Assembly: GCA_002269645.1 (NCBI GenBank)
Contig: NIVC01004569.1
Coordinates: 1 to 41,763, forward strand
Direction: 5' to 3'
From: Macrostomum lignano
Taxonomy: Eukaryota
DNA: 41,763 nucleotides
The position numbers and the translations under genes were made by a program. Below are positions 16,373-32,701 of the stretch, one piece after another. Each line of letters begins with the position of its first letter. Position 1 is the stretch's first letter. The notes under the pieces are model-generated. The model was given only the letters and a program-made list of their open reading frames with translations. It did not search any database and was not told where the DNA came from.

Positions 16373-19300
16373 CTGTTGGCGGGTTTGGAGAAAATCGTTA
16401 ACTTAAAGCCGGAAATTTTTTTATAATGCGACAATAATTGTAAATGAAATTCCACTACGAGTATTTCAACTCAGTTTGATTGAGTTATTCTCAGACTTAT
16501 TGCTTGGATTTTCTTTGCTTCAATCAAGTCAAACAGTTATACCAACTAATTGTCATTTTGTCGTTAATTTAAAGCCGGAAATTTCGTCATACTCGTTAAA
16601 TATAAAAATATAAAGTTGAACTGTTATGCTAATATAGTCTGAATTCATAAAATAAAAGCTTCTTAAGATCTTGCAAGTCGAGCCTTACTACATGTATGTT
16701 AGACACGCATTGCTGTGTCGTTAATCTAATTACGGAAAATTTGTTTGTTTGAGTTCCCACGATTCTCAAACAATTTGATTTTAATGACTTTTACGTATCG
16801 GAACTCACCGATGCTGATCGGCCCGTTCTGCACCAGCCAGGCGGCCATGGCTTTCTCGTCCTTGGAGATGGCCACGGAGCTGTTGATGTAGACGGCCACC
16901 TTGCCCTGGTTGAACTGGCACTTCTGGTCGCTGCCCCTGTACGGATAGTCAGACTCCTTCATCAGGCCGCCCATCCTCTCGATCTCCTTGTAGGCCTGGC
17001 TGGGCAGCCCGCCGTTGCAGCCCTCGTCGACTTTGTCGCAATCGACGAGCTGCTGCTCGGACAGATCGACCAGCTTCTTCTTGCTGATGAACCACTGGCC
17101 CTCAATGTTGCCGGTGGTGCTGAAGGCCCAGCAGCTGCCTGCGGAGTGGGTGAGTTTATATGTAATAGCCTGTGGCCTGCCTTCTCACAGCTCCGACCTA
17201 CTAGCCTGCTAGCTTAATGACCCAGTTCTTTGATTTTTGACCCACTGACCCACTGAACCATTGCCATATCGACTCATTGGACCCGCTTACTAACAGACCC
17301 ACTAACTCACAACGGACTGAATTATGGACCTACTGATGCACTGAACCACTAACCCGCTGACCCATGGACTCGCTGACCCCGTGCTTTACTGACCCACTGA
17401 CCCACTGAACCTTTGACCCACTGAGCCTCTGACCCACTGAACCCTGACCTACCGACCCCTTGACCCCTTGACCCACTGACCCAATGCCGCCCTGAACCCT
17501 TGACCCAACGACTCCCTGACCCACTGACCCACTGACCCACTAACCCATGCACTGACCCTCTGACACATTGACCCACTGACCCCTGACCCTTAGCCCACTG
17601 ACCCACTGACCCCTGACCCTTAGCTCACTGACCCACTGACCCCTGACCCTTAGCTCACTGACCCACTGACCCCTGACCCTTAGCCCACTGACCCACTGAC
17701 CCACTGGCTCCCTGACCCCCTGACACAATGAACCTTTGACCCACTGACCCCCTGACCAACCGACCCCCTGACCCCTTGACCCACTGACCCACTTCCGCCC
17801 TGACCCCTTGACCCAACGACCCCCTGACCCACTGACCCACTGACCCACTAACCCATGCACTGACCCTCTGACACATTGACCCACTGACCCCTGACCCTTA
17901 GCCCACTGACCCACTGACCCCTGACCCTTAGCTCACTGACCCACTGACCCCTGACCCTTAGCCCACTGACCCACTGACCCACTGGCTCCCTGACCCCCTG
18001 ACCCACTGACCCACTGACCCCTGACCCTTAGCCCACTGACCCACTGACCCCTGACCCTTAGCCCACTGACCCACTGACCCACTGGATCCCTGACCCCCTG
18101 ACCCACTGACCCACTGACCACTGACCCATAGCCCACTGACCCACTGACCCCTGACCCTTAGTCCACTGACCCACTGACCCCTGACCCTTAGCTCACTGAC
18201 CCACTGACCCCTGACCCTTAGCCCACTGACCCACTGACCCACTGGCTCCCTGACCCCCTGACCCACTGACCCACTGACCCACTGACCCCTGACCCTTAGC
18301 CCACTGACCCACTGACCCACTGGCTCCCTGACCCCCTGACCCACTGACCCACTGACCACTGACCCGCCAACTCACCACAGGTTCCCTGGTTCTTGACTTC
18401 GGTCACGGCGCCCTTCTCGCGCCAGTCGAAGCTGGTCGGCAGATCGCCCAGGGTGGGCACGGCGGCCTCCTCGGCGGGGCGGCGGCTCAGGTCCCATCTG
18501 GGCGACAGGTAGCGGCTGCGGAACTCCTCCTGGGTGAGGTCGGCGAACACCGACGCGCCGTAGCGAGCATCGCCGCGGTCGAGCATCTGGTAGGCGTAGG
18601 CCTTCTTCATGTTGTCGCGAAAGATGGCGAAGCGGCGCTGCTCCTCGGCTCTGCAATGCAGAAATTCTCGAGGTCTTCGTTACAGAATCTTTGTTCTCTA
18701 CAGGGTGTACTCCATGAAGGTCTTAGAGGTCACAACCTAGAGGTCACATATCCTAAAGGTCACAGGTTCCAGAGGTCACATGTCCTAGAGGTCACGTCTT
18801 AGAGGTCACATGTCCTAGAGGTCATACATCCAAGCAATCACATGTCTCAGAGGTCACAAGCCCCAGAGATCACATATCCTAGAGGTCACATGTCCAAGAA
18901 GTCACATGTCCTAGGGGTCACATGTCCAAGAAGTCATATGTCCTAGGGGTCACAGGTCCCAGAGGTCATTTGTCCAAGAAGTCACATGTCCAAGAAGTCA
19001 CATGTCCAAGAAGTCACATGTCTAAGAAGTCACATGTCCAAGAAGTCACATGTCCAAGAAGTCACATGTCCAAGAAGTCACATGTCCAAGAAGTCACATG
19101 TCCAAGAAGTCACATGTCCAAGAAGTCACATGTCCAAGAAGTCACATGTCCAAGAAGTCACATATCCTAGAGGTCATAAACCAGCCGAAAGCGCTCACCT
19201 GGAGGCGTAGACCTTCCCGTGAGCCCTCTTGAACTCGGCAAACTGTCCGTAGTGTCCGATGTCGTGAGAGTCGCCGCCGAGCAGCACCTGATGCTGCGGC

Positions 19301-19721
19301 TCGCTCCGTTTCAGCCGCCGAGTCTGCTGGCAGCTCTCCAAGCCAGACCGGTCCACTTCGTACTGCCTGGGGCTGCTCCAGGGCCGGTACACCACCGACA
19401 CGGGGCAGCGGTACACCTTAGCGTCCGGGCTCAGCTTCTCCTTGCACCAGCGCAGCGGGCTGCCGTAGTGTCTGACGGCCTTGCGACACGGCGTCTCGAC
19501 GAACACGGCGACGAAACTGTACCGGATGCCCGCCACCACCTGCTTCTTGGCGTCCTCGTATCTGCGGGTGGCGAGAATTTCGAGGTGGAGTTGTTGTTGT
19601 TATTGTTGTTGTTGTTGTTGTTGCTGTTGTTGGTGGTGGTGTTGTTGTTGCTGTTTTTGTTGTTGTTGTTTTTGTTTTTGTTTTTGTTGTTGCTGTTTTT
19701 GTCAAGGTGCAATTTTTGTAG

Positions 19722-19768
<47 letters not shown>

Positions 19769-20111
19769 GGTGGTGGTAGTGGTTGTGTTGTTGTTGTTGT
19801 TGTTGTTTTTGTTGTTGGTGTTGTTGTTGTTTTTGTTGTTGTTTTTGTTGTTGTTGTTGTTGTTGTTGTTAAACTCGGGCAAACAAACTTTTTAAAAAGC
19901 GACTGACTTACCTGAGCATGGCGTGATGGAACATGCTGTTTGAGTAGGTGTTGTACGCCCTCGTCACCTCCGTGATGGCATTCTGAAACGACTCGCCCTC
20001 TGCGTCTTGCGCCGTGATTGGTGATTTACCGCCGGTCACAACGTTGTGAGAGCAATGCGCGCTGATTGCTACTGACAGTAGCAGAGTTAGCCCAAGTAGC
20101 AACCTTGTCAT
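16125..20111 (-). CDS. CTSF: Cathepsin F (papain family C1A), complete 5-exon gene: join(20111-19912, 19561-19199, 18650-18376, 17138-16809, 16372-16125), 1416 nt, 471 aa
   Basis: Manually spliced. All four introns are GT..AG with matching phases (2,2,1,1). Signal peptide [18 protein letters not shown]; cystatin domain (VTGG, QVVAG, PW); I29 prodomain with E-x3-R-x3-F-x2-N-x3-A-x3-Q (ERFNAQ, cathepsin F/W subfamily) and [14 protein letters not shown]; mature enzyme [25 protein letters not shown] (Gln, catalytic Cys), [11 protein letters not shown] (His), YWIIKNSWG (Asn); stop TAA at 16127-16125. Confidence 0.95.
16809..17138 (-). CDS. CTSF: Cathepsin F exon 4 (catalytic Cys region)
   Basis: Acceptor CTCCGCAG|; [16 protein letters not shown]...[10 protein letters not shown]...GCNGG...NGPISI; donor G|GTGAGT. 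Confidence 0.95.
17239..18366. repeat. 8-bp-based satellite GACCCACT filling cathepsin F intron 3
   Basis: Direct reading; interspersed GACCCTTAGCCCACT variants. Confidence 0.95.
18376..18650 (-). CDS. CTSF: Cathepsin F exon 3 (ERFNAQ prodomain and start of mature enzyme)
   Basis: Acceptor TTGCAG|; [21 protein letters not shown]...[18 protein letters not shown]; donor G|GTGAGT. Confidence 0.95.
18725..19177. repeat. 16-bp minisatellite GTCACATGTCCAAGAA in cathepsin F intron 2
   Basis: Direct reading; homogeneous on the right, degenerate on the left. Confidence 0.94.
19199..19561 (-). CDS. CTSF: Cathepsin F exon 2 (cystatin core and start of I29 prodomain)
   Basis: Acceptor CCCGCAG|; [15 protein letters not shown]...YRPWSS...[14 protein letters not shown]; donor CAG|GTGAGC. 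Confidence 0.92.
19591..19870. repeat. (GTT)n/(GGT)n trinucleotide microsatellite in cathepsin F intron 1
   Basis: Direct reading. Confidence 0.96.
19912..20111 (-). CDS. CTSF: Cathepsin F exon 1 (signal peptide and start of cystatin domain)
   Basis: ATG at 20111; ends CTCAG|GTAAGT, phase 2. Confidence 0.88.
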
Positions 20112-20172
20112 ATTGCTCTTCTGGTTTGCTAGCAGAAATTTTCTTATTCTAAAATTTGCATAAACATCAAAT

Positions 20173-20180
20173 TATTTATA
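20173..20180 (-). promoter_or_regulatory. Candidate TATA box of cathepsin F
   Basis: TATAAATA on the minus strand about 62 nt upstream of the ATG. Confidence 0.45.
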
Positions 20181-20406
20181 GTCGATTGTACTTTTAACTA
20201 AAAACATTGTTGGGCTTCTTTTGAAGACGATCAGATAAAGTGCTCAGGCAGTATAATAACAGCTTTGAACTGATTCTTGGACCTGGGGGGTCATTGGCTG
20301 CAATGAATTGGGCTAAATAACTTTATGGTTGATTTTATTCTTGAAGCTGAGTTGAGGCTACGAAGCAGGTTGGCCTATAAATAGACTGGGGGTTTATGGA
20401 TCTCTA

Positions 20407-20903
20407 GATGGTTTACCCCCGATTCGCCGAATCCCGATTTGCCGATTCCCAGCTCGCCGAATCCCGACTTGCCGATTTCCTGATTCGCCGAATTCCCGAC
20501 TCGCCGAATTCACTATTCGGTCAATTCGTACTACGTCGAATATCTGGTAATGCCTGTGGCCTGTGCTAGCTAGTAGATAAGCCATTCTTTGTTCGAACCT
20601 TGTGTATATTTTGCTTGTTTCATTCACTCTACTATTTCTTAGTGACTTACTAATACTAATACTCAAGAAATAATGGAGTAAATGATAACAAGCAAAAATG
20701 TACAAAACGTTCGAGAAAAGAATGGAGCCTTATCTATTAGCTAGCACAGGCCACAGGCATTACCAGAGATTCGACGTAGTACGAATTGGCCTAATAGTGA
20801 ATTCGGCGAGTCGGGAATTCGGCGAATCAGGAAATCGGCGAATCAGGATTCGGCGAGCTGGGAATCGGCAAATCGGGATTCGGCGAATCGGGGGTAGACC
20901 CTC
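20407..20903. mobile_element. Foldback/MITE-like element with ~200-bp terminal inverted repeats
   Basis: Arms ~20407-20610 and ~20692-20903 are reverse complements (both translate to LLASTGHRHYQ.FDVVRI..IVNSASREFGESGNR); ends GATGGTTTACCCCCG / CGGGGGTAGACCCTC; TA on both sides; 15-16-bp subrepeats (CGATTCGCCGAATCC-like) within the arms. Confidence 0.7.
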
Positions 20904-20914
20904 TAGATAGCCTT

Positions 20915-21167
20915 CTGAAACAGCTGTCAGGGGGTATCAAAGGCCTCCTGAAGCAACTGTCAGGTGTATCAAATACCCACTGAAGCAAACTGTCAGGGGG
21001 TATCAAAGAACCCCTGAAGCAACTGTCAGGGGGTATTAAAGGCCCCCTGAAGCAACTGTCAGGGGGTATCAAAGGCCTACTGAAGCAACTGTCAGGGGGT
21101 ATCAAAGGCCTACTGAAGCAACTTTCAGGGGGTATCAAAGGCCTCCTGAAGCAACTGTCAGGGGGTA
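20915..21167. repeat. 33-bp minisatellite CTGAAGCAACTGTCAGGGGGTATCAAAGGCCTC, ~7.5 copies
   Basis: Direct reading; abuts the right arm of the foldback element. Confidence 0.93.
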
Positions 21168-23140
21168 GAAACGATGTAGAAAAGTTACTGTCCAACTATA
21201 CTCGTAATCCTTACTTAATTAAAATTCAGACTTACCAATTCAAACTTTTCAACGATATGAATTAAAAGTTGTTTCAGAAGCTTTACAGAGAATTTAGTAG
21301 CAGCACACAGATAAACTAAAGCCTTCCTTCCTATTTAAAACATTTGCAGTTTGTGCTTTAGATTGTGTTGCCAAGATATACCCAAGCTGAGGCCACTTCA
21401 GTCTTTCCCTACCCTCTCTTCGGGCCAACCATGCAGTAAGGGGGGGGGGGGCATGAAGGTTGAATCGAGTTTTCGTCCTCTCCCTTCGGTGCTGCTGAGG
21501 GCACACTGCACATAGGCTGTATTGCGGTGTGTGCGTATGTACGTACGTTACTTATCTTAATGGCGTACTCTTTTATTACTTGCCAGAATCAGTGAATAAG
21601 CGATAAGAGCTATAGCAATATGCATGGCTGATTTAAACTAATTCGAACAGATTTAGACCTGTTTATCACGTGATTTTTTTTTTTATTTTAGCAAATCGAA
21701 ATATTAAAACGACCTGACTTGTTCATTTATTCGATGTGAAGTTTTTCCGTAAACATTGTGTTATACGAGCTAAATCTTTATATGCATGCTATTATTCAAT
21801 ACGTACAATAATTTTTTCAAAAAATGAAACGTTTTTTCGCTAGCACAACTGTATGCAGGGGGTGGGACAGCAGCATGGCACATGCATGCAGACAGTTCCA
21901 ACTTCGGCACATTGCATGTACTGTACATATTTTGCTCTAAAATTATATTTTGATCGGACTGCAAAACTGCAGCGTATGCTTTATCACCGTTGCTTCAATC
22001 TACAAGATTGTGCTGCGTCTATATATTTAGCCGCATACAAAATATTATAAAACTTGACTTTCTTGGAGAATAACGGACAAGCGCAGCGAAAGTCCTTCGA
22101 ATAGTTTTAGATTGAAATTCCTATTGCCGCCATATAACCATTCGACCTTAGCCCATAAAACTTGATCGTACACGAGATTATACCAATTGAGGACGGTAAC
22201 TTCTAGTAGTCCTTGGATTATACTTGAGTACTTGAGTGCATGCATGTAAAGATACTACTAAAGATACTAAAGAAGCACATCGAAAAGATACGGTCCGAAA
22301 TCTCATCCATAAAAAGCGGTGAAATGTCATTAAAAAGGAGAATTGGTCCTTAATTGCCAGCTGAAAGAGGCAGACGGTGTGGGAAGTTCAAAAAGAATAA
22401 ATTTGTGATAAACTAAAAAAATGAATCTGAAACTGTGATTTTGCTATTTATTACTGTAGAGCTATATCAACGATTATTGGAATTTGAGTTAAATCATAAA
22501 AAACTTGCGCATGTTGTTATAGTGCCGAATGATAAGCCGATGTCTAAATTCAACATCGGAAATTGGGTGTAGTACTTTAAATTTAAAAAAGCAGTCTGGC
22601 AGTGACAATACGAGCTTGAAACATAAAACTGCGTATTGCTGTAAATTGAGTTTTCAGATAGTCTGCCTATTCTTTGCTAGCAATAGAAAGTAATTATCAA
22701 CCACCAGAATTTCAATTTGGTTACATACATGTCTGTTTAACTGTTCTTAGTCCCTCATGCAAGAACGTCTAATATTCAAAATTCAAAATGCAGATCATGT
22801 TTTGTTGTGTGCCATGAAACTAAAACTAATGTCTTTTTATGGTTTTGTTTTTTAATTTAATTTAATTTTTTCTAGGACTGTAATAATTTTACATGGACGA
22901 GGGTGACTCAGCTATTTTTAGCTATTTATTTACTGTGTTCCGCTTAATTCAATTTTAATTAACTTAAAATAATGAAACTAAAAACTATTTTACCTATAAA
23001 ATGTGAAGTTTTTTTACTTCATAGGAAGCTTTAGCATTTATAATTAGCTTTCAAAAAACAATCTTTTTGCCTTTATGACTGGTTTACTAGAGTCATCTTT
23101 ATATTTTATTGCACAAAAGAATTTTATCTATCTATGCTTA

Positions 23141-23300
23141 GGTGCAACCTTGGGATTTACTTGGCCATTTCTATTGGCAACACACACATGTAAGTTGCTA
23201 TTGGACAGAATAGTAGTCACGTGACTGCTCTCAGCCAATAGTGACTTACATGTGTGTGTGTTGTCAATAGAAATGGCCAGGTAATTCCCAAGGTTGCGCA
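23141..23300. mobile_element. 160-bp loopless palindromic MITE-like element
   Basis: Left arm GGTGCAACCTTGGGATTTACTTGGCCATTTCTATTG... mirrors right arm ...CAATAGAAATGGCCAGGTAATTCCCAAGGTTGCGCA; axis GTCAC|GTGAC at 23220/23221; TA on both flanks. Confidence 0.7.
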
Positions 23301-23789
23301 TATATGATTTTTTTCATAACTTTTGAACTTTTTCTTATATAAATAAAGTATTAAAGAAAGTAAAATGAACTTAAGTTACATAAATGTCATAAAAATGGTT
23401 TTATGTTAATTCTTGTCTTCATCAAAACATCTTGCCTTTTCATAAGCTAGACTTTTTGTTAGAAACTGGTTGTTAATTAGAGTAGAATGCTCAATAAAGC
23501 TTTATGCCTTTATTTGGCAAGTTATCAAAAAATTCTATTAGAATAAAAATGTGGACTCTAGGAAATTCTTCTAAGACTAGTTGAATAGTTATGATTTTTA
23601 ATAGAAATATAAATTACCTATATTCTATATAACTAGTATATTGTATATATTTATAGTTTTTACTATCATTGTAATTAATTGCAATCACCAATACTATAAA
23701 ATTGCATTTGTAGGCATTGGTTGTAGCTTAGATAAAAACTTTTATCATTTTTTAGGAGGCAAAAGGATGCCATAGCTGCCGTAAAGGGT

Positions 23790-24045
23790 AAAAGGGTACC
23801 AAAATAGTTAGCTAGGGGCACCACAACTGCTATGAAAGGGCGCCAAAACAGCTGGCTAGGGGGCACCGCAACTGCTATAAAAGGACACCAAAACAGCTGG
23901 CTAGGGGGCGCCGCAACTGCTATGAAAGGGCGCCAAAACAGCTGGCTAGGGGGCGCCGCAACTGCTATGAAAGGACGCCAAAACAGCTGGCTAGGGGGCG
24001 CCGCAACTGCTATGAAAGGGCGCCAAAACAGCTGGCTAGGGGGCG
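23790..24045. repeat. 45-bp minisatellite CTATGAAAGGGCGCCAAAACAGCTGGCTAGGGGGCGCCGCAACTG, ~5 copies
   Basis: Direct reading; MKGRQNSWLGGAATA periodicity. Confidence 0.93.
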
Positions 24046-24124
24046 AATTTCATGATGCTAAATGGCGCCATGATTCTGACAAAAAGCACTGGTTGTTAGC
24101 GCAGTCTCTGCTCGCCCCCCGCAG

Positions 24125-24649
24125 ATGTCATTCTCCATCTCCAGCTTCGTGGCCAAACGCCGCCAACTCCACCAGGCTCGCACAATCTGCCAGCAGAGTT
24201 TCGGCAGGAAGCTGCGCTGCGCAATTTGTGGCGATAAAATCCGTCGCTGGTGCCAACGCGAGGAGACGCTGTGCCATCCGTTGAGCTGCTACGATCACCC
24301 GTGCCACTCGCACTGCATGCTGTCGATCTTGGGCGCTGACCAGCCGATGGGCAGCCAGCAGGTGTGCCCGGGTGCCGGCTGCAGTCGCCAGTTTAGCCAG
24401 CTGTGCTTTCACCGCTCCTGGTGGGGCCGATCGTCTGGACAGCGAAGCGTCAACAACTTGCCGTCTGGTGACAACGACGCAGTCGATGGCGGCGATCAGC
24501 TGGTCGACCAAACTACAGACGAGCTCCATGAAGCCGCCGCCGCTGCCGCCGACGGAGACAGCAGCAGCAGCAGCAGCGGAGGCTTTTCATTAAGAAATTT
24601 TCGGCGATTTTTTCCCGTCTTGGTGAGCTCCTGGGGTTGGTACGGATAG
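24125..24649 (+). CDS. RING-H2-like zinc-finger ORF; probably exon A (24125-24622) of a larger gene
   Basis: C-x2-C-x19-C-x2-H-x2-H-x2-C-x16-C-x4-C (CAIC...CYDHPCHSHC...CPGAGC); GC-rich; preceded by acceptor-like CCCCCCGCAG; strong donor TTG|GTGAGC at 24623. Confidence 0.6.
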   Translation: MSFSISSFVAKRRQLHQARTICQQSFGRKLRCAICGDKIRRWCQREETLCHPLSCYDHPCHSHCMLSILGADQPMGSQQVCPGAGCSRQFSQLCFHRSWWGRSSGQRSVNNLPSGDNDAVDGGDQLVDQTTDELHEAAAAAADGDSSSSSSGGFSLRNFRRFFPVLVSSWGWYG

Positions 24650-24750
24650 AAAAAGAAGATATTGGCAGCAGTTTAAGATAATGACCTCGGTCACCACGGC
24701 AAATCAAACCGTGGCTGTTTTCATGGTAAATTATGCTCGTATTCCGCTAG

Positions 24751-25618
24751 CTGAGGTCATGACCCTATGATTAACAATGGCAACTGAGGTCATGACCCTA
24801 TGATTAACAATCGCAACTGAGGTCATGACCCTATGATTAACAATCGCAACTGAGGTCATGACCCTATGATTAACAATCGCAACTGAGGTCATGACCCTAT
24901 GATTAACAATCGCAACTGAGGTTATGACCCTATGATTAACAATCGCAACTGAGGTTATGACCCTATGATTAACAATCGCAACTGAGGTCATGACCCTATG
25001 ATTAACAATCGCAACTGAGGTTATGACCCCATGATTAACAATGGCAACTGAGGTCATGACCCCATGATTAACAATGGCAACTGAGGTTATGACCCTATGA
25101 TTAACAATGGCAACTGAGGTCATGACCCTATGATTAACAATGGCAACTGAGGTCATGACCCTATGATTAACAATCGCAACTGAGGTCATGACCCTATGAT
25201 TAACAATCGCAACTGAGGTTATGACCCTATGATTAACAATGGCAACTGAGGTCATGACCCTATGATTAACAATCGCAACTGAGGTTATGACCCCATGATT
25301 AACAATGGCAACTGAGGTTATGACCCTATGATTAACAATGGCAACTGAGGTCATGACCCTATGATTAACAATCGCAACTGAGGTCATGACCCTATGATTA
25401 ACAATCGCAACTGAGGTTATGACCCTATGATTAACAATGGCAACTGAGGTCATGACCCTATGATTAACAATCGCAACTGAGGTCATGACCCTATGATTAA
25501 CAATCGCAACTGAGGTCATGACCCTATGATTAACAATTGCAACTGAGGTCATGACCCTATGATTAACAATCGCAACTGAGGTCATGACCCTATGATTAAC
25601 AATCGCAACTGAGGTCAT
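24751..25618. repeat. 33-bp minisatellite CTGAGGTCATGACCCTATGATTAACAATCGCAA, ~26 copies
   Basis: Direct reading; 26 MTSVAIVNHRV-type units in the ORF track. Confidence 0.97.
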
Positions 25619-25715
25619 ATATTCAAGCAGAAGAATCTGGGATCTGGAGTTTCCTACATCTTTTTCACAAGATCGAACTGGTTTAACCGCAGCTGCCGCC
25701 ATCCCGCTCCCTACA

Positions 25716-26492
25716 ATGCAGATCTCATCAAGCAAGCGCCAGAAGCGGCAGCAACAGGAGCAGGAGCAGCGGGTGTCAGACGAGCAAGCCGCCGAACAGG
25801 AGCCAATGGAACTGTCGCTCAACAGTCTGGAAGCTGAGTGCGCCATCTGCTGTTGCGGCATCGACACTGAAGCCGGCGTGCCAAATGGTTGCTGTCACAG
25901 CTTCTGTTTCGACTGCCTGAAGGAATGGGTGGTCAACAATGCCAGCTGCCCGATGGACCGGCGGCCGGTGAACTTTATCTACAAGCGCCAGCCAGGCTCG
26001 CAGGCCTTCACTGGGCGGCACCGGGTGTTCCTGCGGAACAGTCGCGACGCCTGCCAGGGCGGCTACTGCGGCCCGTTGGAGTCGCCGCCTGGGGAGCCGC
26101 ACTTCTCTGAGCCTGGCGGCGGCGGCGGCGGCTGGTTCAGTTCGGCCAGACTCGAACCCAGCGCCCCTCCGGCCTCCAGCTTTGACAATAACGACAGAAG
26201 CAACAATGCCAACGCGAATGCCTCGGCGGCTAGAAGCGGCGGAGATGTATCAGCGCTGTTCGCGTTCGTAGCAGCCGTACTGTTGGCCATTGTCATCTTC
26301 GCGTTCTTCCGCAGATACGGAGCTTCGCCGAATCCGGTGCCGACTCCTGCTCCGCCACCGGCTGCCGAATCCGGTAGCTCAGTAGCCAATCTGATTCAGT
26401 TTGTTGTCCTAGTGGTGGTGCTGTACCTCACCGCCCAGCTTTGCCTGACGAGCAGTCAGACTAATACTAGAGCAGTGCCGGGTCGGGCTTGA
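25716..26492 (+). CDS. RING-HC (C3HC3D) protein with two C-terminal transmembrane helices, putative membrane E3 ligase; possibly exon B from 25722
   Basis: CAIC-x13-C-x-H-x2-C-x2-C-x10-CPMDR, resembling PHRF1/SCAF11-type RINGs (HxFCxDCxxEW...CPxDR); hydrophobic segments ALFAFVAAVLLAIVIFAFF and LIQFVVLVVVLYLTAQLCL. Confidence 0.8.
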   Translation: MQISSSKRQKRQQQEQEQRVSDEQAAEQEPMELSLNSLEAECAICCCGIDTEAGVPNGCCHSFCFDCLKEWVVNNASCPMDRRPVNFIYKRQPGSQAFTGRHRVFLRNSRDACQGGYCGPLESPPGEPHFSEPGGGGGGWFSSARLEPSAPPASSFDNNDRSNNANANASAARSGGDVSALFAFVAAVLLAIVIFAFFRRYGASPNPVPTPAPPPAAESGSSVANLIQFVVLVVVLYLTAQLCLTSSQTNTRAVPGRA

Positions 26493-26723
26493 GGGGACGA
26501 CTGTTGGCTGCGATAATTCCACTTCCGTAATGAATATGGCCCTTGTAGCTAGTTCCTGCTGTTCCTGCTGTCCTGCTGCGTGTTGTCTGGGCGGGAGTTT
26601 TAATTATATAATCTCATTATTCTCTCTGATCTCAAGTAGTAATTGATGACATTCACAAGTTTGAAATTTTTCATTCGTATGTACACGCATCTGAATTATT
26701 GCGTGATTGTGATTTACAATTGT

Positions 26724-28148
26724 TGAATCCCAGAATTCTAACCCACAGTCTGAGAACCCCGAATCCTTAAATCCCAACCCTGATCCTAAATCCCAGAATG
26801 CTGATCCCAAATCCTTGAATCCTGATCCCGAATCCTTGAATCCCAACCCCGATCCCGGAATCCTGATCCCAAATTCCAGAATCCTGATTCCAAATCCCGG
26901 AATCCTGATTAACTGATTCCCAATCCCAAAATCCTGATCCCAAATCCCAGAATCCTGATTCCAAATCTCGGAATCCTAATTGACTGATTCCCAATCCCAG
27001 AATCCGGATCCCAAATCCCAGAATCCTGATCCCAAATCCTTGAATCCTGATCCCAAATCCTTGAATCCTGATCCCAAATCCTTGAATCTTGAACCCAAAT
27101 CCCGGAATCCTGATCCCTGATCCCAAATCCTTGAATCTTGAACCAAAATCCCGGAATCCTGATTCCAAATCCCGGAATCCTGAATGACTGATTCCCAATC
27201 CCAGAATCCTGATCCCAAATCCCAGAATCCTGATTAACAAATCCCGGAATCCGGAATGACTGATTCCCAATCCCAGAATCCTGATCCCGGAATCCTGATC
27301 CCAGAATCCTGATCCCAGAATCCTGATCCCAGAATCCTGATCCCAGAATCCTGATCCCAAATCCCAGAATCCTGATTCCAAATCCCGGAATCCTGATTGA
27401 CTGATTCCTAATCCCAGAATCCTGATCCCAAATCCCAGAATCCTGATCCCAAATCCCAGAATCCTGATCCCAAATCCTTGAATCTTGAACCAAAATCCCG
27501 GAATCCTGATTCCAAATCCCGGAATCCTGAATGACTGATTCCCAATCCCAGAATCCTGATCCCAAATCCCAGAATCCTGATTAACAAATCCCGGAATCCG
27601 GAATGACTGATTCCCAATCCCAGAATCCTGATCCCGGAATCCTGATCCCAGAATCCTGATCCCAGAATCCTGATCCCAGAATCCTGATCCCAGAATCCTG
27701 ATCCCAGAATCCTGATCCCAGAATCCTGATCCCAAATCCCAGAATCCTGATTCCAAATCCCGGAATCCTGATTGACTGATTCCTAATCCCAGAATCCTGA
27801 TCCCAAATCCCAGAATCCTGATCCCAAATCCCAGAATCCTGATCCCAAATCCTTGAATCTTGAACCCAAATCCCGGAATCCTAATTCCAAATCCCGGAAT
27901 CCTGAATGACTGATTCCCAATCCCAGAATCCTGATCCCAAATCCCAGAATCCTGATCCCAAATCCCAGAATCCTGATCCTAAATCCTTGAATCTTGAACC
28001 CAAATCCTTAAATATTGATCCCAAATCCTTGAATCTTGATCCCAAATCCTTGAATCCTGATCCCAAATCCCAGAATCCTGATCCCAAATCCCAAAATCAT
28101 GATCCCTTATCCCAGAATCCTGATCCCAAATCCCAGAATCCTGATCCA
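26724..28148. repeat. 7-bp-based complex satellite (GAATCCT GATCCCA AATCCCA)
   Basis: Direct reading. Confidence 0.95.
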
Positions 28149-28767
28149 GCATGCATGCCAAAATCTAGACCCCGAACTCGTGAAATTACTTTCTCAGACA
28201 CGTCAGTCTGTAATGCATATCCCCAATCCGGATCAGAGTATGTTTATTCCGACCAAGAATGTTTATTTTGATAGCCTAGATAATTATTTCGTGAGTTTTT
28301 AGAATTTTACTATTCCATACCATTTGCCTTGTGTTAGCAAGTGGTTTCTCCATTAACAGTATAATTATAGAATGTTAATTGCCTTTCAATTTCCTTTTTT
28401 AACGATAGCGGTACCGTATGCGGCTTAAAAAACGCAACAACATGTGTGCCTACTTTTGCGTTAAAAATTTATGAAACGATTTTAATGCTAGTGTATTTTC
28501 GCTATCTTTATTACTCGTAAAAGTAAAAAATGTAGTTATTGCTTCAAAATACTACTTACGAGTACACAATGATTGTAAACACAGAAGTTGTTTGGAAGGA
28601 AAATATATTTGACAAGAAAACTGCCTATTTTTTAAGCATTCAAAGAAAACGTCGCCAAAACGCTATTAAGATGGATTTTACGTAGTTTTTGGGAATTGTA
28701 CTTTCGATTTTTGTGGGAGTTACAATTCAACTATTCGCTGAGAATTAGGCTGGCGGCACAAGTCAAA

Positions 28768-29340
28768 ATCGAGGTACATTGAGCGAGGCAGAGTGGCTTG
28801 AATTAGTAGGGCAGGAGGCAAAATTGATGTACATTGGGCGAGGTGGGTGGCTTGAACTGGCGGGGCAGAAAGAGCCAAAATTGATGTACATTGGGCGAGG
28901 TGGGGTGGCTTGAACTGGCGGGACAGAGAGCCAAAATTGATGTACATTGAGCGAGGTGGGTGGCTTGAACTGGAGGGGCAGAGAGCGCCACAATCGATGT
29001 ACATTGGGCGAGGTGGGGTGGCTTGGACTGGCGGGGCAGAGAGCCAAAATTGATGTACATTGGGCGAGGTGGGGTGGCTTGAACTGGCTGGGCAGAGAGC
29101 CAAAATTGATGTACATTGGGCGAGGTGGGGTGGCTTGAACTGGCGGGGCAGAAAGAGCCAAAATTGATGTCCATTGGGCGAGGTGGGGTGGCTTGAACTG
29201 GCGGGACAGAGAGCCAAAATTGATGTACATTGAGCGAGGTGGGTGGCTTGAACTGGAGGGGCAGAGAGCGCCACAATCGATGTACATTGGGCGAGGTGGG
29301 GTGGCTTGGACTGGCGGGGCAGAGAGCGTCACAATCGATG
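28768..29340. repeat. 56-58-bp minisatellite AAAATTGATGTACATTGGGCGAGGTGGGGTGGCTTGAACTGGCGGGGCAGAGAGCC, ~10 copies
   Basis: Direct reading; variant pattern repeats with a ~283-bp period. Confidence 0.94.
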
Positions 29341-29632
29341 AGCATTCAGCTAAAATAAACAAAAAATATTTTGTTTCGTAATGGTTTCGAGATTGGCAAT
29401 CAACAGAATTAATTACGAGCTATTATATTCTTGCCCCCGAAATTTTCCCAGCGAGCGCATAAAAATACATTGCATGCTTTTTCCTCTCCCTCTTAATCTG
29501 CTCTAAGCTCGTAACATTAGATTCGCAGCCTCTTTGGATCTTGGAACCTGGTTTCCCCGATTCTCGTTTCCGCGAGATGCTCCCAAACAGACTATTTGTG
29601 CATCCGCAGTAAGCCAGTCAGTCTCCAAGGAA

Positions 29633-29875
29633 CCAATGGCAAACCGATTTTGGCTTCTTGCGCAGCTGCCCACCCACCCCCTGCCAGTAACGAGCCTATA
29701 AAATGGAACGCTTCATCTCTGGCAGCTGGAAGTGCCCGCCTCCACAATCTAACTATATTCCCTGATCGCTGCAGTGAAGCAAGGTACTAAGCAATAAAGG
29801 TAAGAGTAAGCAATGTACTATTGCAGTATGTAAGCAGCACGAGTGAGATGATGCCGATTCCAAACCCCGTTGCAG
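29633..29875 (+). promoter_or_regulatory. Promoter and 5'UTR intron of precursor A
   Basis: CCAAT 29633-29637, TATAAAA 29697-29703, donor AAG|GTAAGA at 29800, acceptor CGTTGCAG| at 29875. Confidence 0.6.
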
Positions 29876-29903
29876 ACTCATCAACTTCGACCAAACACTG
29901 GCA

Positions 29904-30197
29904 ATGTCCCCGATCTTGCTAGCCATCCTGCTGATTGCGGCTGTGTCCTCGGCGTCGGCGATGCCACCGCATAACCGCCGGCGGGAGAACTTGTCGGACG
30001 AGCTCATGAAGTTTGCGACGGCGGCGGCCGCTGCTGCTGCTGGCCCGCCGGACGCCTTGGACGAGCTGGTGGAGCCGCTGGCCGCCGCTGAAGGTGAACC
30101 TCGCCATCGTGGCAGCCGGTTGTCACCGTTCTTGAGCAAGAGGCACAGTCTGCAGTCGATTCTGTACAAGCTGGGCCACTTCAAAAGTGGCAAATGA
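29904..30197 (+). CDS. Small secreted peptide precursor (prohormone-like), 97 aa, paralogue A
   Basis: Signal peptide MSPILLAILLIAAVSSASA; basic sites RRR and KR; C-terminal KR-HSLQSILYKLGHFKS-GK-stop (amidation signal); upstream CCAAT, TATA and 5'UTR intron. Confidence 0.8.
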   Translation: MSPILLAILLIAAVSSASAMPPHNRRRENLSDELMKFATAAAAAAAGPPDALDELVEPLAAAEGEPRHRGSRLSPFLSKRHSLQSILYKLGHFKSGK

Positions 30198-30412
30198 TGG
30201 CCCAATGGCCTTCAGCAGCTGACTAGACAAGCACAGACTCCATGCGATTGAAACATTCGAAAATATATATTTTTTTTAAATCGAAAGTTTGCTGTGGTAC
30301 ATCTTTGTGACTTTCGATTTTTAAATTACACTCGTCTTTTATGATGTAATTGTTTGATTTACGAGAGTAATATCAAGAAATGGGTTACTTTATGATAACT
30401 ACTGAGTGTGGA

Positions 30413-31042
30413 GGGCTCACTGTAGCTTCAGAAAGTCGCAGTGGGCGTCACTGAAGCATCAGGAAGTCGCAGTGGAGGTCACTGAAGCATCAGAAAGTCG
30501 CAGTGGATGGATCACTGAAGCATCAGGGAATCAAAATGGGGTCACTGAAGCATCAGAAAGTCGCAGTGGGGGTCACTGAGCACCAGGGAATCAAAATGGG
30601 GTCACTGAAGCACCAGGAAATCAAAATGGGGTCACTGAAGCATCAGAAAGTCGCAGTGGGGGTCACTGAGCACCAGGGAATCAAAATGGGGTCACTGAAG
30701 CACCAGGAAATCAAAATGGGGTCACTGAAGCATCAGGAAATCAAAATGGGGTCACTGAAGCACCAGGAAATCAAAATGGGGTCACTGAAGCATCAGGAAA
30801 TCAAAATGGGGTCACTGAAGCATCAGAAAGTCGCAGTGGGGGTCACTGAAGCATCAGAAAGCCGCACTGGGGGGTCACTGAAGCATCAGAAAGCCGCACT
30901 GGGGGTCACTGAAGCATCAGAAAGCCGCACTGGGGGGTCACTGAAGCATCAGAAAGCCGCACTGGGGGTCACTGAAGCATCAGAAAGCCGCACTGGGGGG
31001 TCACTGAAGCATCAGAAAGCCGCAGTAAGAGGTTACTGAAGC
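30413..31042. repeat. ~29-30-bp minisatellite with GGGGTCACTGAAGCA core, between the two precursor genes
   Basis: Three tail variants: TCAGAAAGTCGCAGT, CCAGGAAATCAAAAT, TCAGAAAGCCGCACT. Confidence 0.94.
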
Positions 31043-31761
31043 GTTGGAGGCGGTAGCGACAAAATTATTATCCGAGGTAAAATCCATAAATTTTGCTGCC
31101 GACGCTGAATTTAAAATTATTTTTAGACGCGAGACAATTCCCTCGCGCTGATATGCGATCCCGTGGATCCGCAGAAATTGAGACAGCTACGCCCCAGAAC
31201 ATGACTCTGCCCCGTGTCTTAATGAAGATTGTTGCCAACCCCCCTGCCAGAAAACAATTAGCAGTCCGATTTAATCAGTGTTGGATTTCAGGCGTCTCAG
31301 AATTTTAATAATTCGAGTAATTGGAGTTTATCTCACCTGCTGGGAGACACAACAGGTGAGCGCGTGGGAGGACAGCTCCATTCTTATTCGTCCACTGTTC
31401 CTTCGGCCTCCACGAAATCAATTTATTACATGCGAAGCTTTTCTCATCTTTCCTGATTTTTGTTTTAACATTTAACTGTTTCCCTACTGCTGTACTGCAT
31501 CCAGGAGGCGATGGCATGGTGATCTGGGTGTGTAGTATCGGCGGCACTGCTGTGGAGACGTTCTGTGGGGAAACGGTTGCTCAAATACTAACTTATTTTA
31601 TAAATCATTATGCATTCTCATGTGATGGAAATTCGGAGAGTGATTCCAGTCGACATTGGGAATGAAGAATGAAAAGTGAGCCATTAAATTTCTCAGGGCA
31701 GTCAAGCTCTATCAGATTGCTTTTTCTGTGAGTTCTAAAATTAGCTGCATAGTTGATGCAG

Positions 31762-31977
31762 CCAATCATGAGATCTGAGGAGCTGTTCGACATCTCAACT
31801 ATCAATATTTAAAGCAAACTCACCCAGCTTAAATATTCTCTTAAGGCCCTCAAAAAATCTCCACACTAAAAACTGGGAGACTTCGAAATCCGGTAAGTTG
31901 GCTTCGAGATTCCCCCCCCCAGAGTTTTTCATACTTTTGAAGCAGGCTCAAACTCGGATGCACTGATTCCGTTCCAG
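31762..31977 (+). promoter_or_regulatory. Promoter and 5'UTR intron of precursor B
   Basis: CCAAT 31762-31766, TATTTAAA 31806-31813, donor CG|GTAAGT at 31893, acceptor CGTTCCAG| at 31977. Confidence 0.5.
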
Positions 31978-32007
31978 AGCTTCATCAAGAACCAAGCAAC
32001 AAGCACA

Positions 32008-32288
32008 ATGGCTGCCTCTCTCTCGTTGAAGCCGACAGCTCTGCTGCTGCTGGTACTGCTTTCGGTGGCATCGGGAGCCAACTCTGCTGACAACCCTCTG
32101 GAGGGGCTGGTGAATTTCTGCCGTCAAATCTGCGAACAGGAGCGGCTGTCAGCTGACAGCCTTTGGCAGCCTCAGCCTCAGCCGAGGCCAGTGAGCCTCA
32201 GCCGGAGAACGCCGAGTCTTCAAGCCATCTTTACAAGCTGGGCCATCCGCCGGAATCCAGCAAGGACAAGAAGCAGCAATTCTTCTGA
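32008..32288 (+). CDS. Small secreted peptide precursor, paralogue B, about 93 aa after correcting a 1-nt frameshift at ~32228-32232 (sequencing error or pseudogene)
   Basis: Signal peptide MAASLSLKPTALLLLVLLSVASG; LSRR-TPSLQAI, then in the shifted frame YKLGHPPESSKDKKQQFF-stop (TGA 32286-32288); TACAAGCTGGGCCA is identical to paralogue A; AATAAA at 32374-32379. Confidence 0.7.
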
Positions 32289-32701
32289 TTTCTGCCTCAG
32301 AACTTCGACTTTTGATTTAGATTGTTTTGGCAGTCGAATCGTAGAACTTGGATTTTTTGAAGAACAAAATTTAAATAAAAGCCCCATCGGCGGGAGAAGG
32401 TGGCTGACTGTTACGAATCGCATGGTTCCAACGACTTATATTCATTTTTATTGACAAAAGTTCCAATTACTCTACTGATCAGTAGTCAGTTAATGCCGCT
32501 ATTCTTCAAGTAATAATTTTGAATACTTGGAATAATAGATGAATGCCAGCATATTTCAGTAAAAGCTGCTACACCGAATAATTTGCAACGCGAAGAAGAT
32601 TCAATCTGTTCTGCATCGCTCAGCCTCACAAGCAAATATTCTAATAGAGTATTGCCTACTTTAGGACGCTTGTGTCATAACTGAGAATTATGACAATCAT
32701 A

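What the first reader, a model, noticed from the sequence alone, without database searches (positions are those of the whole stretch)
29904..32288. Tandem pair of divergent prohormone-like genes defining a candidate new peptide family (LS-[KR]R-x-SLQxILYKLGH)
Seen: two ~95-aa secreted ORFs 2.1 kb apart on the same strand, dissimilar except for two blocks. One is ENLSDELMKF vs DNPLEGLVNF after the signal peptide. The other is LS-KR-HSLQSILYKLGH vs LS-RR-TPSLQAI(L/F)YKLGH, with 14 identical nt (30165-30178 and 32232-32245). A ends FKS-GK-stop; B ends PPESSKDKKQQFF without an amidation Gly and carries a C-x3-C pair. Established: signal peptide, dibasic convertase sites and a Gly-basic amidation signal with conservation limited to the mature peptide is the standard neuropeptide precursor pattern. 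Inference: a ligand family with an amidated 15-mer (HSLQSILYKLGHFKS-NH2) and an extended non-amidated sibling. I do not recognise the core as any described neuropeptide family.
Basis: partly seen in the sequence, partly recalled or inferred. Interest (0 to 1): 0.85.

Follow-up and report, generated by a model that had tools for sequence, protein, structure and literature searches.

The report
Orphan prohormone-like gene pair in Macrostomum
Two neighbouring small genes of the flatworm Macrostomum lignano look like precursors of secreted signalling peptides that share one short conserved core, a plausible but untested species-level addition to the many lineage-specific flatworm peptide genes; one of the two is broken by a single-base deletion in this contig.

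Summary
The window is contig NIVC01004569.1 of Macrostomum lignano (Mlig_3_7). Gene A (29904-30197, 97 aa) is intact, with a signal peptide, an acidic spacer, KR, HSLQSILYKLGHFKS and GK-stop. Gene B starts at 32008, but in this contig a 1-nt deletion after 32231 splits it across two frames. The two other genomic copies carry the intact 93-aa ORF (...LSRR-TPSLQAIFYKLGHPPESSKDKKQQFF).

The shared C-terminal block is real. BLASTP gives 12/17 identities, E=4e-5, and none of 2000 shuffles reaches the score.

Both genes come from an RNA-seq-based annotation and are named only 'hypothetical protein'. A homeologue of A differs by 5 synonymous and 2 non-synonymous changes, neither non-synonymous one in the peptide.

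I found no relative outside M. lignano (k-mer searches, HMMER over 1.84 billion representatives), no Pfam or PDB match, and nothing in the literature. I tested a PDF/cerebrin resemblance against 12 spiralian precursors and it failed; only the precursor layout is alike.

Best reading: a paralogous pair of prohormone-like genes, an orphan member of a known kind. Processing, neuronal expression and 'family' status beyond one species are untested. Interest is modest.

The parts
29904..30197 (+). Gene A, single-exon CDS of 97 aa (Mlig016515 gene family; the identical protein is also encoded on NIVC01000838.1)
   Evidence: ORF list. The exact protein is found on two contigs of GCA_002269645.1. The homeologue PAA74919.1 differs by 2 aa.
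29904..29960 (+). Predicted signal peptide of A, MSPILLAILLIAAVSSASA, with the cleavage site ASA|M
   Evidence: It is the only strongly hydrophobic stretch in the protein (Kyte-Doolittle 9-residue windows starting at 1-10). The -3/-1 rule was applied by inspection; SignalP was not available.
29976..29984 (+). RRR (residues 25-27), a possible extra convertase site that would release MPPHN
   Evidence: Translation. Cleavage is inferred.
30138..30143 (+). KR dibasic site (residues 79-80) directly before the conserved core
   Evidence: It aligns with RR of B.
30144..30188 (+). Predicted mature peptide of A, HSLQSILYKLGHFKS, amidated if processed (calculated [M+H]+ 1756.986)
   Evidence: The homeologue carries one synonymous change here (L83 CTG>CTT) and no amino-acid change.
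30189..30197 (+). Gly-Lys-stop, the amidation donor plus a basic residue
30413..31042 (.). 30-nt minisatellite in the A-B intergenic region. It is not part of either gene and its copy number differs between genomic copies.
   Evidence: TRF; three-way alignment.
31893..31977 (+). 85-nt GT..AG intron in the 5' UTR of gene B (GTAAGT ... TTCCAG)
   Evidence: It is implied by the annotated product P0001...RLRNP|SFIKNQATSTMAAS, and by the splice-site sequences.
32008..32231 (+). Gene B, first part: ATG to the first two bases of codon 75. It contains signal peptide residues 1-26 (32008-32085, cleavage site uncertain), CRQIC (32119-32133), RR (32203-32208) and TPSLQAI (32209-32229).
32231..32232 (+). 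Site of the 1-nt deletion (missing C of TTC = Phe75) that frameshifts B in this contig only
   Evidence: Alignments with the two other copies. The intact ORF is present in L002.
32232..32288 (+). Gene B, second part in the shifted frame: YKLGHPPESSKDKKQQFF-stop
32374..32379 (+). AATAAA polyadenylation signal of gene B. The annotated model ends near 32415.

Best explanation
A and B are tandem paralogues in Macrostomum lignano that encode small secreted prohormone-like precursors.

Shown:
- Both are transcribed gene models.
- Both begin with a signal-peptide-like segment.
- Both place a conserved core, SLQ-x-I-[LF]-YKLGH, one or two residues after a dibasic site preceded by L-S.
- The core has been held constant at the amino-acid level while the rest of the two genes diverged beyond recognition.

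Inferred mechanism for A: signal peptidase cuts after Ala19. A PC2/PC1-type convertase cuts after KR80, and possibly after RRR27. A carboxypeptidase removes Lys97. PAM uses Gly96 to give HSLQSILYKLGHFKS-NH2, which is released from secretory vesicles and acts on a receptor.

Inferred mechanism for B: cleavage after RR67 gives the non-amidated TPSLQAIFYKLGHPPESSKDKKQQFF. If KK88-89 is also cut, the product is TPSLQAIFYKLGHPPESSKD.

Only the N-terminal core is shared, so that core, not the amidated C-terminus, would be the receptor-binding determinant.

The B copy in this window carries a 1-nt deletion. It is more likely an unpolished PacBio consensus error than a real null allele, but this is undecided.
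For: - Organism and gene models.
- The annotation is built from RNA-seq (StringTie/TACO/TBONE).
- Significance of the motif.
- Six synonymous codon differences at conserved residues between A and B (L, R, L, Q, I, H).
- A against its homeologue on NIVC01000913.1: 5 synonymous and 2 non-synonymous changes, pN/pS 0.14. Both non-synonymous changes lie outside the peptide (signal peptide L5S, spacer L52F). The 150-aa antisense ORF acquires a stop in that copy. A binomial computed by hand from those counts gives P about 0.015 for 2 or fewer non-synonymous changes out of 7.
- The N-terminus is the only strongly hydrophobic segment of each protein; the only other window above the cut-off is the poly-Ala run of A.
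- The locus order RING gene - A - B is kept in three genomic copies, and B's CDS is identical in all three apart from the deletion.
- The pattern of a conserved peptide with a divergent signal and spacer is the usual one for neuropeptide paralogues (established knowledge).
Against: - No orthologue was found outside M. lignano, so the key test, conservation limited to the peptide across species, could not be made.
- There are no expression, peptidomic or receptor data. Neither gene ID appears in the complete table of ISH-tested M. lignano transcripts, and the other supplementary tables searched were either negative or truncated.
- B lacks an amidation signal, and the C-termini of the two peptides are unrelated.
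- The signal peptide and cleavage sites were judged by rule, not by a trained predictor.
- The homeologue counts are small, and the divergence of flanking non-coding DNA (about 2%) is not much higher than pN.
Confidence: 0.55

Rival explanations
1. The genes encode small secreted proteins or peptides of non-neuronal secretory cells (gland, epidermal, host-defence or reproductive secretions). They may be cut by furin-like enzymes but do not act as hormones or neuropeptides. A has the layout of amphibian-type antimicrobial peptide precursors: signal, acidic propiece, KR, short cationic peptide, GK.
For: A's spacer is acidic (net -5) and the predicted peptide is cationic (+2 from Lys, plus 2 His) and amidated. 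Nothing ties either gene to neurons. M. lignano has many lineage-specific secreted gland products (literature).
Against: The hydrophobic moment of the A peptide is ordinary (muH 0.30; 24% of shuffles are as high). The conservation pattern is the reverse of that in antimicrobial peptide gene families, where the signal and propiece are conserved and the mature peptide is hypervariable (established knowledge, set). Neither gene is among the ISH-validated antrum, prostate, testis or ovary transcripts in the one complete table I could search.
Confidence: 0.22
2. A (and B) are highly derived PDF/cerebrin-type precursors, the flatworm orthologues of pigment-dispersing factor.
For: Size and layout match spiralian PDF/cerebrin precursors, which run 72-98 aa in nemerteans and brachiopods (the two phoronid precursors in the same list are about 170 aa): signal, spacer, KR, a single 16-18-aa peptide at the extreme C-terminus, then G[KR]n-stop. 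There is a loose resemblance of I-L-Y-K-L-G to S-L-Y-N-L-P. As in PDF, the N-terminal and central part is the conserved part.
Against: An HMM of 12 spiralian mature regions scores A at -1.4 bits and B at -2.0 bits; 27% and 22% of shuffles score as well. hhalign aligns only the signal peptides (probability 10%). Pfam Pigment_DH gives no hit even at E<=10. The invariant D-S-L and the near-invariant P of the family are absent at the corresponding positions.
Confidence: 0.07
3. The ORFs are not functional coding sequences: chance ORFs in GC-rich transcribed DNA, or decaying duplicates, with B in this window a pseudogene.
For: B in the window is frameshifted and would give a non-stop mRNA. No homologue exists in the large databases. 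A GC-rich antisense ORF of 150 aa overlaps A.
Against: The shared motif is kept through six synonymous codon differences. The ORFs are intact in the other copies. The antisense ORF is broken in the homeologue. Synonymous changes outnumber non-synonymous ones in A. The deletion is the only difference in about 470 aligned nt of a PacBio/Canu assembly that was polished with short reads, which map ambiguously to three near-identical copies.
Confidence: 0.06

Closest known systems
Lineage-specific flatworm prohormone genes (e.g. the spp/npp genes catalogued in Schmidtea mediterranea, Collins et al. 2010, PMC2953531)
   Same: Small precursors of about 100 aa with a signal peptide, dibasic sites, frequent C-terminal Gly-basic amidation signals, and no homologue outside a narrow clade. 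Many were found only by rule-based searches.
   Different: The motif SLQxI[LF]YKLGH or its fragments do not occur in that paper or its supplementary sequence tables. The planarian genes have peptidomic and in situ support; these two have none.
PDF/cerebrin precursors of spiralians (Thiel et al. 2021, PMC8557429, supplementary list)
   Same: Overall size, and a single peptide at the extreme C-terminus after KR that is followed by G[KR]-stop. The N-terminal and central part of the peptide is the conserved part.
   Different: The sequence signature x(3-4)-[VI]-D-S-L-[WYF]-x-L-P...[VI]-amide is not present. The profile score is no better than for shuffled sequence. There is no conserved spacer helix (QEIxxSAxxILR). 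B is neither amidated nor C-terminal in the same way.
Amphibian-type antimicrobial peptide precursors (signal, acidic propiece, KR, cationic amidated peptide, GK)
   Same: A has the same layout, with an acidic spacer and a short cationic peptide with an amidation signal.
   Different: The amphipathicity is unremarkable. The conservation pattern between paralogues is the opposite of that family's. This comparison rests on general knowledge, not on a database test.

Membership tests
Peptide-hormone / neuropeptide precursor (generic architecture) | N-terminal signal peptide and no other membrane segment | tested here: met
   The high-hydropathy windows cluster at residues 1-18 (A) and 7-24 (B); the one other window above the cut-off is the poly-Ala run of A. 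Small residues occupy -3/-1 (ASA|M; ANS|A or ASG|A). This is rule-based; SignalP was not available.
Peptide-hormone / neuropeptide precursor (generic architecture) | Dibasic convertase site directly flanking the conserved peptide | tested here: met
   LS-KR|HSLQ in A and LS-RR|TPSLQ in B. Actual cleavage was not tested.
Peptide-hormone / neuropeptide precursor (generic architecture) | Gly followed by a basic residue or stop as the amidation signal | tested here: inconclusive
   Present in A (S-G-K-stop). Absent in B (ends QQFF-stop).
Peptide-hormone / neuropeptide precursor (generic architecture) | Conservation concentrated in the mature peptide, with the spacer and signal free to diverge | tested here: met
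   Between the paralogues only: the C-terminal block gives 0/2000 shuffles and the propeptides give P=0.88, with synonymous codon differences inside the block. It could not be tested across species because no orthologues were found.
Peptide-hormone / neuropeptide precursor (generic architecture) | Processed peptide detectable; expression in neurons or endocrine cells; a cognate receptor | not testable with these tools
   I could not find peptidomic, in situ or single-cell data for Mlig016515 or Mlig028219.
PDF / cerebrin | Mature-peptide signature (invariant D-S-L, L-P, C-terminal aliphatic amide) | tested here: not met
   An HMM of 12 spiralian sequences scores A at -1.4 bits and B at -2.0 bits, within the shuffle distribution. 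There is no Pfam Pigment_DH hit at E<=10.
PDF / cerebrin | Precursor layout: signal, associated peptide, KR, one C-terminal peptide, G[KR]n-stop; 72-98 aa in nemerteans and brachiopods | tested here: met
   A at 97 aa has this layout. B has it only in part, with no Gly and a long tail.
PDF / cerebrin | Profile-level similarity of whole precursors | tested here: not met
   hhalign aligns only the signal peptides, probability 10%.
Class B GPCR ligands (glucagon/secretin, PTH, CRF/DH44, calcitonin) | Match to the family profiles | tested here: not met
   No Pfam family at E<=10 for the precursors or the isolated peptides. No PDB chain at E<=10. The 'HS' start and the LYKL tetrapeptide shared with one insect PTH-like sequence are isolated coincidences.
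Cationic amphipathic antimicrobial peptide precursors | Strongly amphipathic cationic helix; conserved prepro region with a hypervariable mature peptide | tested here: not met
   muH is 0.30, with P=0.24 against shuffles. The conservation pattern is the reverse of the family's.

The most novel reading that the evidence does not exclude
A and B are the founding members of a previously undescribed, macrostomid-restricted (or fast-evolving flatworm) peptide-hormone family. Its receptor-binding determinant is the N-terminal core SLQ-x-I-[LF]-YKLGH rather than an amidated C-terminus. One paralogue is amidated and short; the other is extended and not amidated. A less likely version is that they are the long-missing, extremely derived flatworm counterparts of PDF/cerebrin.
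Probability: 0.4. Interest if true: 0.45.

Novelty: new member of a known kind. Interest (0 to 1): 0.3.

Why it matters
If the peptides are real, M. lignano, the one flatworm with routine transgenesis, gains an unannotated ligand pair that can be tested directly by peptidomics, reporter lines, RNAi and GPCR deorphanisation. It would also add to the evidence that flatworm peptidergic signalling is largely lineage-specific. The practical lesson is about the assembly: the three near-identical copies of the locus differ by single-base indels that break ORFs, so small-gene surveys on Mlig_3_7 need the paralogous copies or the reads as a check. None of this bears on a long-standing open question. 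Orphan prohormone candidates of this sort are expected in any flatworm genome.

Tried and rejected
1. Homologue searches. K-mer/phmmer searches with A, intact B and a C-terminal A+B profile found only M. lignano's own proteins. An HMMER profile search of 1.84 billion representatives gave the two B models plus one spurious hit, P0009. That protein is a 763-aa Ig-repeat protein whose repeated LSPxRxxxELQFxFYRNGH boosts the score.
2. Pfam at E<=10 on both precursors and on the isolated peptides: nothing. PDB sequences with the profile: nothing.
3. Literature. The motif strings were not found in 8.3 million full texts, nor the gene IDs. The Collins 2010 text and supplements have no motif fragment. 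The polyclad atlas supplement has none. The Thiel 2021 supplements give only chance tetrapeptides in receptors and unrelated precursors. McVeigh 2009 and 2012 are not held. No M. lignano neuropeptidome paper was found.
4. The PDF/cerebrin lead, first recalled from memory, was tested with real sequences and rejected at the sequence level.
5. The antimicrobial-peptide idea: the hydrophobic moment is unremarkable.
7. More family members nearby: a six-frame motif scan of the window and of +/-10 kb around the other two copies found only A and B. The downstream '57-aa gene' of NIVC01000838.1 is a tandem-repeat artefact.
8. Expression look-ups in supplementary tables were negative or, in the last paper, mostly truncated files.
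9. The bacterial promoter/terminator scan is irrelevant for a eukaryote and was ignored.
Full report
**Where the window comes from.** The 97-aa product of ORF 29904-30197 is encoded, residue for residue, on two contigs of assembly GCA_002269645.1. One is NIVC01004569.1, 41,763 bp, which is the window itself. The other is NIVC01000838.1, 435 kb. The sources name the proteins 'hypothetical protein BOX15_Mlig...[Macrostomum lignano]'. A third copy of the locus lies on NIVC01000913.1. All three copies have the same order: RING-finger gene, gene A, gene B. M. lignano is a known neopolyploid with large duplicated blocks, and Mlig_3_7 is a Canu assembly of PacBio reads polished with Pilon.

**Checking the observation.** Gene A is exactly as described:
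- MSPILLAILLIAAVSSASA (signal-like)
- MPPHN-RRR
- a 51-residue acidic spacer with an Ala run (residues 28-78, ending in L-S)
- KR
- HSLQSILYKLGHFKS
- GK-stop

Gene B is not a single ORF in this window. The frame that starts at ATG 32008 reads ...LSRRTPSLQAIF and then TSWAIRRNPARTRSS..., with no stop before the AATAAA at 32374-32379. The text YKLGHPPESSKDKKQQFF-stop is in another frame. Aligned with NIVC01000838.1, the window lacks one C after 32231 (ATCTT-TAC against ATCTTCTAC). That is the only difference in about 470 aligned bases, and NIVC01000913.1 also has the C. In those two copies the ORF is intact, 93 aa from the ATG, ending ...VSLSRRTPSLQAIFYKLGHPPESSKDKKQQFF. GenBank's model for this contig (P0002) reads on in the wrong frame.

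The differences between the window and NIVC01000838.1 across 29400-31560 are almost all indels, most of them inside the minisatellite. Short-read polishing of three near-identical copies is unreliable. I therefore think an uncorrected consensus error is the more likely cause, roughly 2:1 over a real null allele. Only the reads can decide.

**Is the similarity more than chance?** The C-terminal block is. BLASTP gives 12/17 identities and E=4e-5 for the single comparison, and none of 2000 shuffles reaches the score. It scores 14 in BLOSUM62, and the best local alignment between the two propeptides is below the shuffle mean (P=0.88).

At the codon level the block is informative. Of the 12 identical aligned residues, six use different synonymous codons in A and B: L TTG/CTC, R AGG/AGA, L CTG/CTT, Q CAG/CAA, I ATT/ATC and H CAC/CAT. 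The duplication is therefore old enough to have randomised silent sites and everything else in the genes, while the peptide core was held.

**Coding strand and constraint.** A 150-aa antisense ORF overlaps A and shares its wobble positions. In the NIVC01000913.1 homeologue that antisense ORF acquires a stop. In the sense frame the seven differences are 5 synonymous and 2 non-synonymous (L5S in the signal peptide, L52F in the spacer), giving pN/pS 0.14. A binomial computed by hand from those counts gives P of about 0.015 for so few non-synonymous changes. The numbers are small, and flanking non-coding divergence is only about 2%, so this is supportive rather than strong. B's CDS is identical in all three copies apart from the deletion.

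**Transcription.** The GenBank annotation of Mlig_3_7 is the 'coregenes' subset of a genome-guided RNA-seq transcriptome (StringTie, TACO and TBONE with trans-splicing and poly(A) data). Both genes therefore rest on transcript evidence. The annotated product of B (P0001) begins with translated 5' UTR that is spliced across an 85-nt GTAAGT...TTCCAG intron at 31893-31977. An AATAAA lies about 35 nt before the model's end. An old 1007-aa UniParc model (P0008) fuses the RING gene, A and B. It is plainly chimeric and says nothing reliable about co-transcription.

**What it most likely is.** Each protein has a single strongly hydrophobic segment at the N-terminus, with small residues at -3/-1. In each, a dibasic site preceded by L-S sits immediately before the only conserved block. 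A ends in Gly-Lys-stop. This is the standard layout of a peptide-hormone precursor.

The inferred pathway for A:
1. Signal peptidase cuts after Ala19.
2. A convertase cuts after KR80.
3. A carboxypeptidase removes Lys97.
4. PAM uses Gly96, giving HSLQSILYKLGHFKS-NH2 (calculated [M+H]+ 1756.986).

For B the inferred product is TPSLQAIFYKLGHPPESSKDKKQQFF (3021.583), or TPSLQAIFYKLGHPPESSKD (2215.139) if KK is also cut.

Every step after translation is inference. What the paralogue comparison adds is that the conserved, presumably receptor-binding, part is the N-terminal core. The C-termini, including the amide, are unrelated.

**Comparison with known families.**
- Pfam gives nothing at E<=10 for the precursors or the isolated peptides. 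The PDB gives nothing.
- The motif and its fragments are absent from 8.3 million full texts, from the planarian prohormone catalogue and its supplements, and from a polyclad atlas supplement.
- In the large spiralian proneuropeptide lists they appear only as chance tetrapeptides.
- From memory, A resembled PDF/cerebrin precursors, so I tested that with 12 nemertean and brachiopod precursors taken from Thiel et al. 2021. Size and layout do match for those 12 (72-98 aa; the phoronid precursors in the same list are about 170 aa): a single C-terminal peptide after KR, then G[KR]-stop. But hhalign pairs only the signal peptides (probability 10%). An HMM of the mature regions scores A at -1.4 bits and B at -2.0 bits, no better than 27% and 22% of shuffles. 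The invariant D-S-L...L-P is missing. Membership is therefore not supported, and only 'works like' remains possible.
- The antimicrobial-precursor layout also fits A, with an acidic spacer and a cationic amidated peptide. However, the hydrophobic moment is ordinary, and the conservation pattern is the reverse of that family's.

**Relatives elsewhere.** None were found.
- Three k-mer-seeded searches and one exhaustive HMMER profile search of 1.84 billion cluster representatives returned only M. lignano's own B models and one spurious hit, a repeat-boosted Ig-repeat protein.
- A six-frame motif scan found no further copy in the window or within 10 kb of the other two loci.
- I could not verify that other Macrostomum species are represented in those collections, so this is absence of evidence. 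It does mean that 'family' currently stands for two paralogues, each in up to three genomic copies, in one species.

**Expression.** I found no data.
- The gene IDs appear in no main text.
- They are absent from the supplements of two M. lignano transcriptome papers.
- In a third paper, the one complete table, which lists transcripts with published in situ patterns in reproductive tissues, contains neither gene. The genome-wide tables there were truncated in storage.

**Verdict.** A prohormone-like paralogue pair is the best reading (about 0.55). The rivals are non-neuronal secretory products (about 0.22), derived PDF (about 0.07) and non-functional ORFs (about 0.06). It is a new, unannotated member of a well-known kind. 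Lineage-specific peptide precursors are common in flatworms, so the interest is modest (0.3) until orthologues, peptides or a receptor are shown.

Noticed in passing
window 1-41763: The contig is dominated by tandem and simple repeats: 44 TRF rows with periods of 2-354 nt, many arrays longer than 500 nt. Most of the long 'ORFs' in the six-frame list are repeat translations.
   Followed up: partly
window 24125-26492 (+): Two-exon RING-finger gene (PAA47113.1, 422 aa, weak zf-RING_2 hit, hydrophobic C-terminal segments). Its intron is filled by a 26-copy 33-nt tandem array (24751-25618). The gene precedes A in all three genomic copies.
   Followed up: partly
window up to about 20111 (-): A cathepsin-L-like gene (Inhibitor_I29 + Peptidase_C1, 471 aa) lies upstream on the opposite strand.
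   Followed up: no
P0008 (UniParc UPI0007A2EB98); window about 19200-32190: An old 1007-aa gene model is a chimera of antisense-translated upstream sequence, the RING gene, gene A and gene B. A is joined to B through a predicted intron of about 1.77 kb. Because of this model, gene A sits in a 90%-identity cluster whose representative is the RING protein, which is why A never appears as a hit in the homology searches.
   Followed up: partly
window 29400-32700 vs L003/L004: The window is a mosaic of the other two copies. It is identical to NIVC01000838.1 up to about 31560, apart from indels and a few differences inside the 30-nt minisatellite (30413-31042), but it shares the NIVC01000913.1 state at 31563-31722. 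From 31723 to 32700 all three copies are identical except for a poly-C length and the 1-nt deletion. This suggests recombination or gene conversion among the copies.
   Followed up: partly
window 30413-31042: The 30-nt minisatellite between A and B differs in copy number and unit variants among the three genomic copies.
   Followed up: no
window 29753-30205 (-): A 150-aa antisense ORF overlaps gene A and shares its third codon positions. It is interrupted by a stop in the NIVC01000913.1 copy, so it is a by-product of GC-rich coding sequence.
   Followed up: yes
L004 16115-18759: A gene model with a 57-aa product downstream of B on NIVC01000838.1 lies inside a roughly 660-bp tandem repeat and does not look like a secreted peptide gene.
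   Followed up: partly
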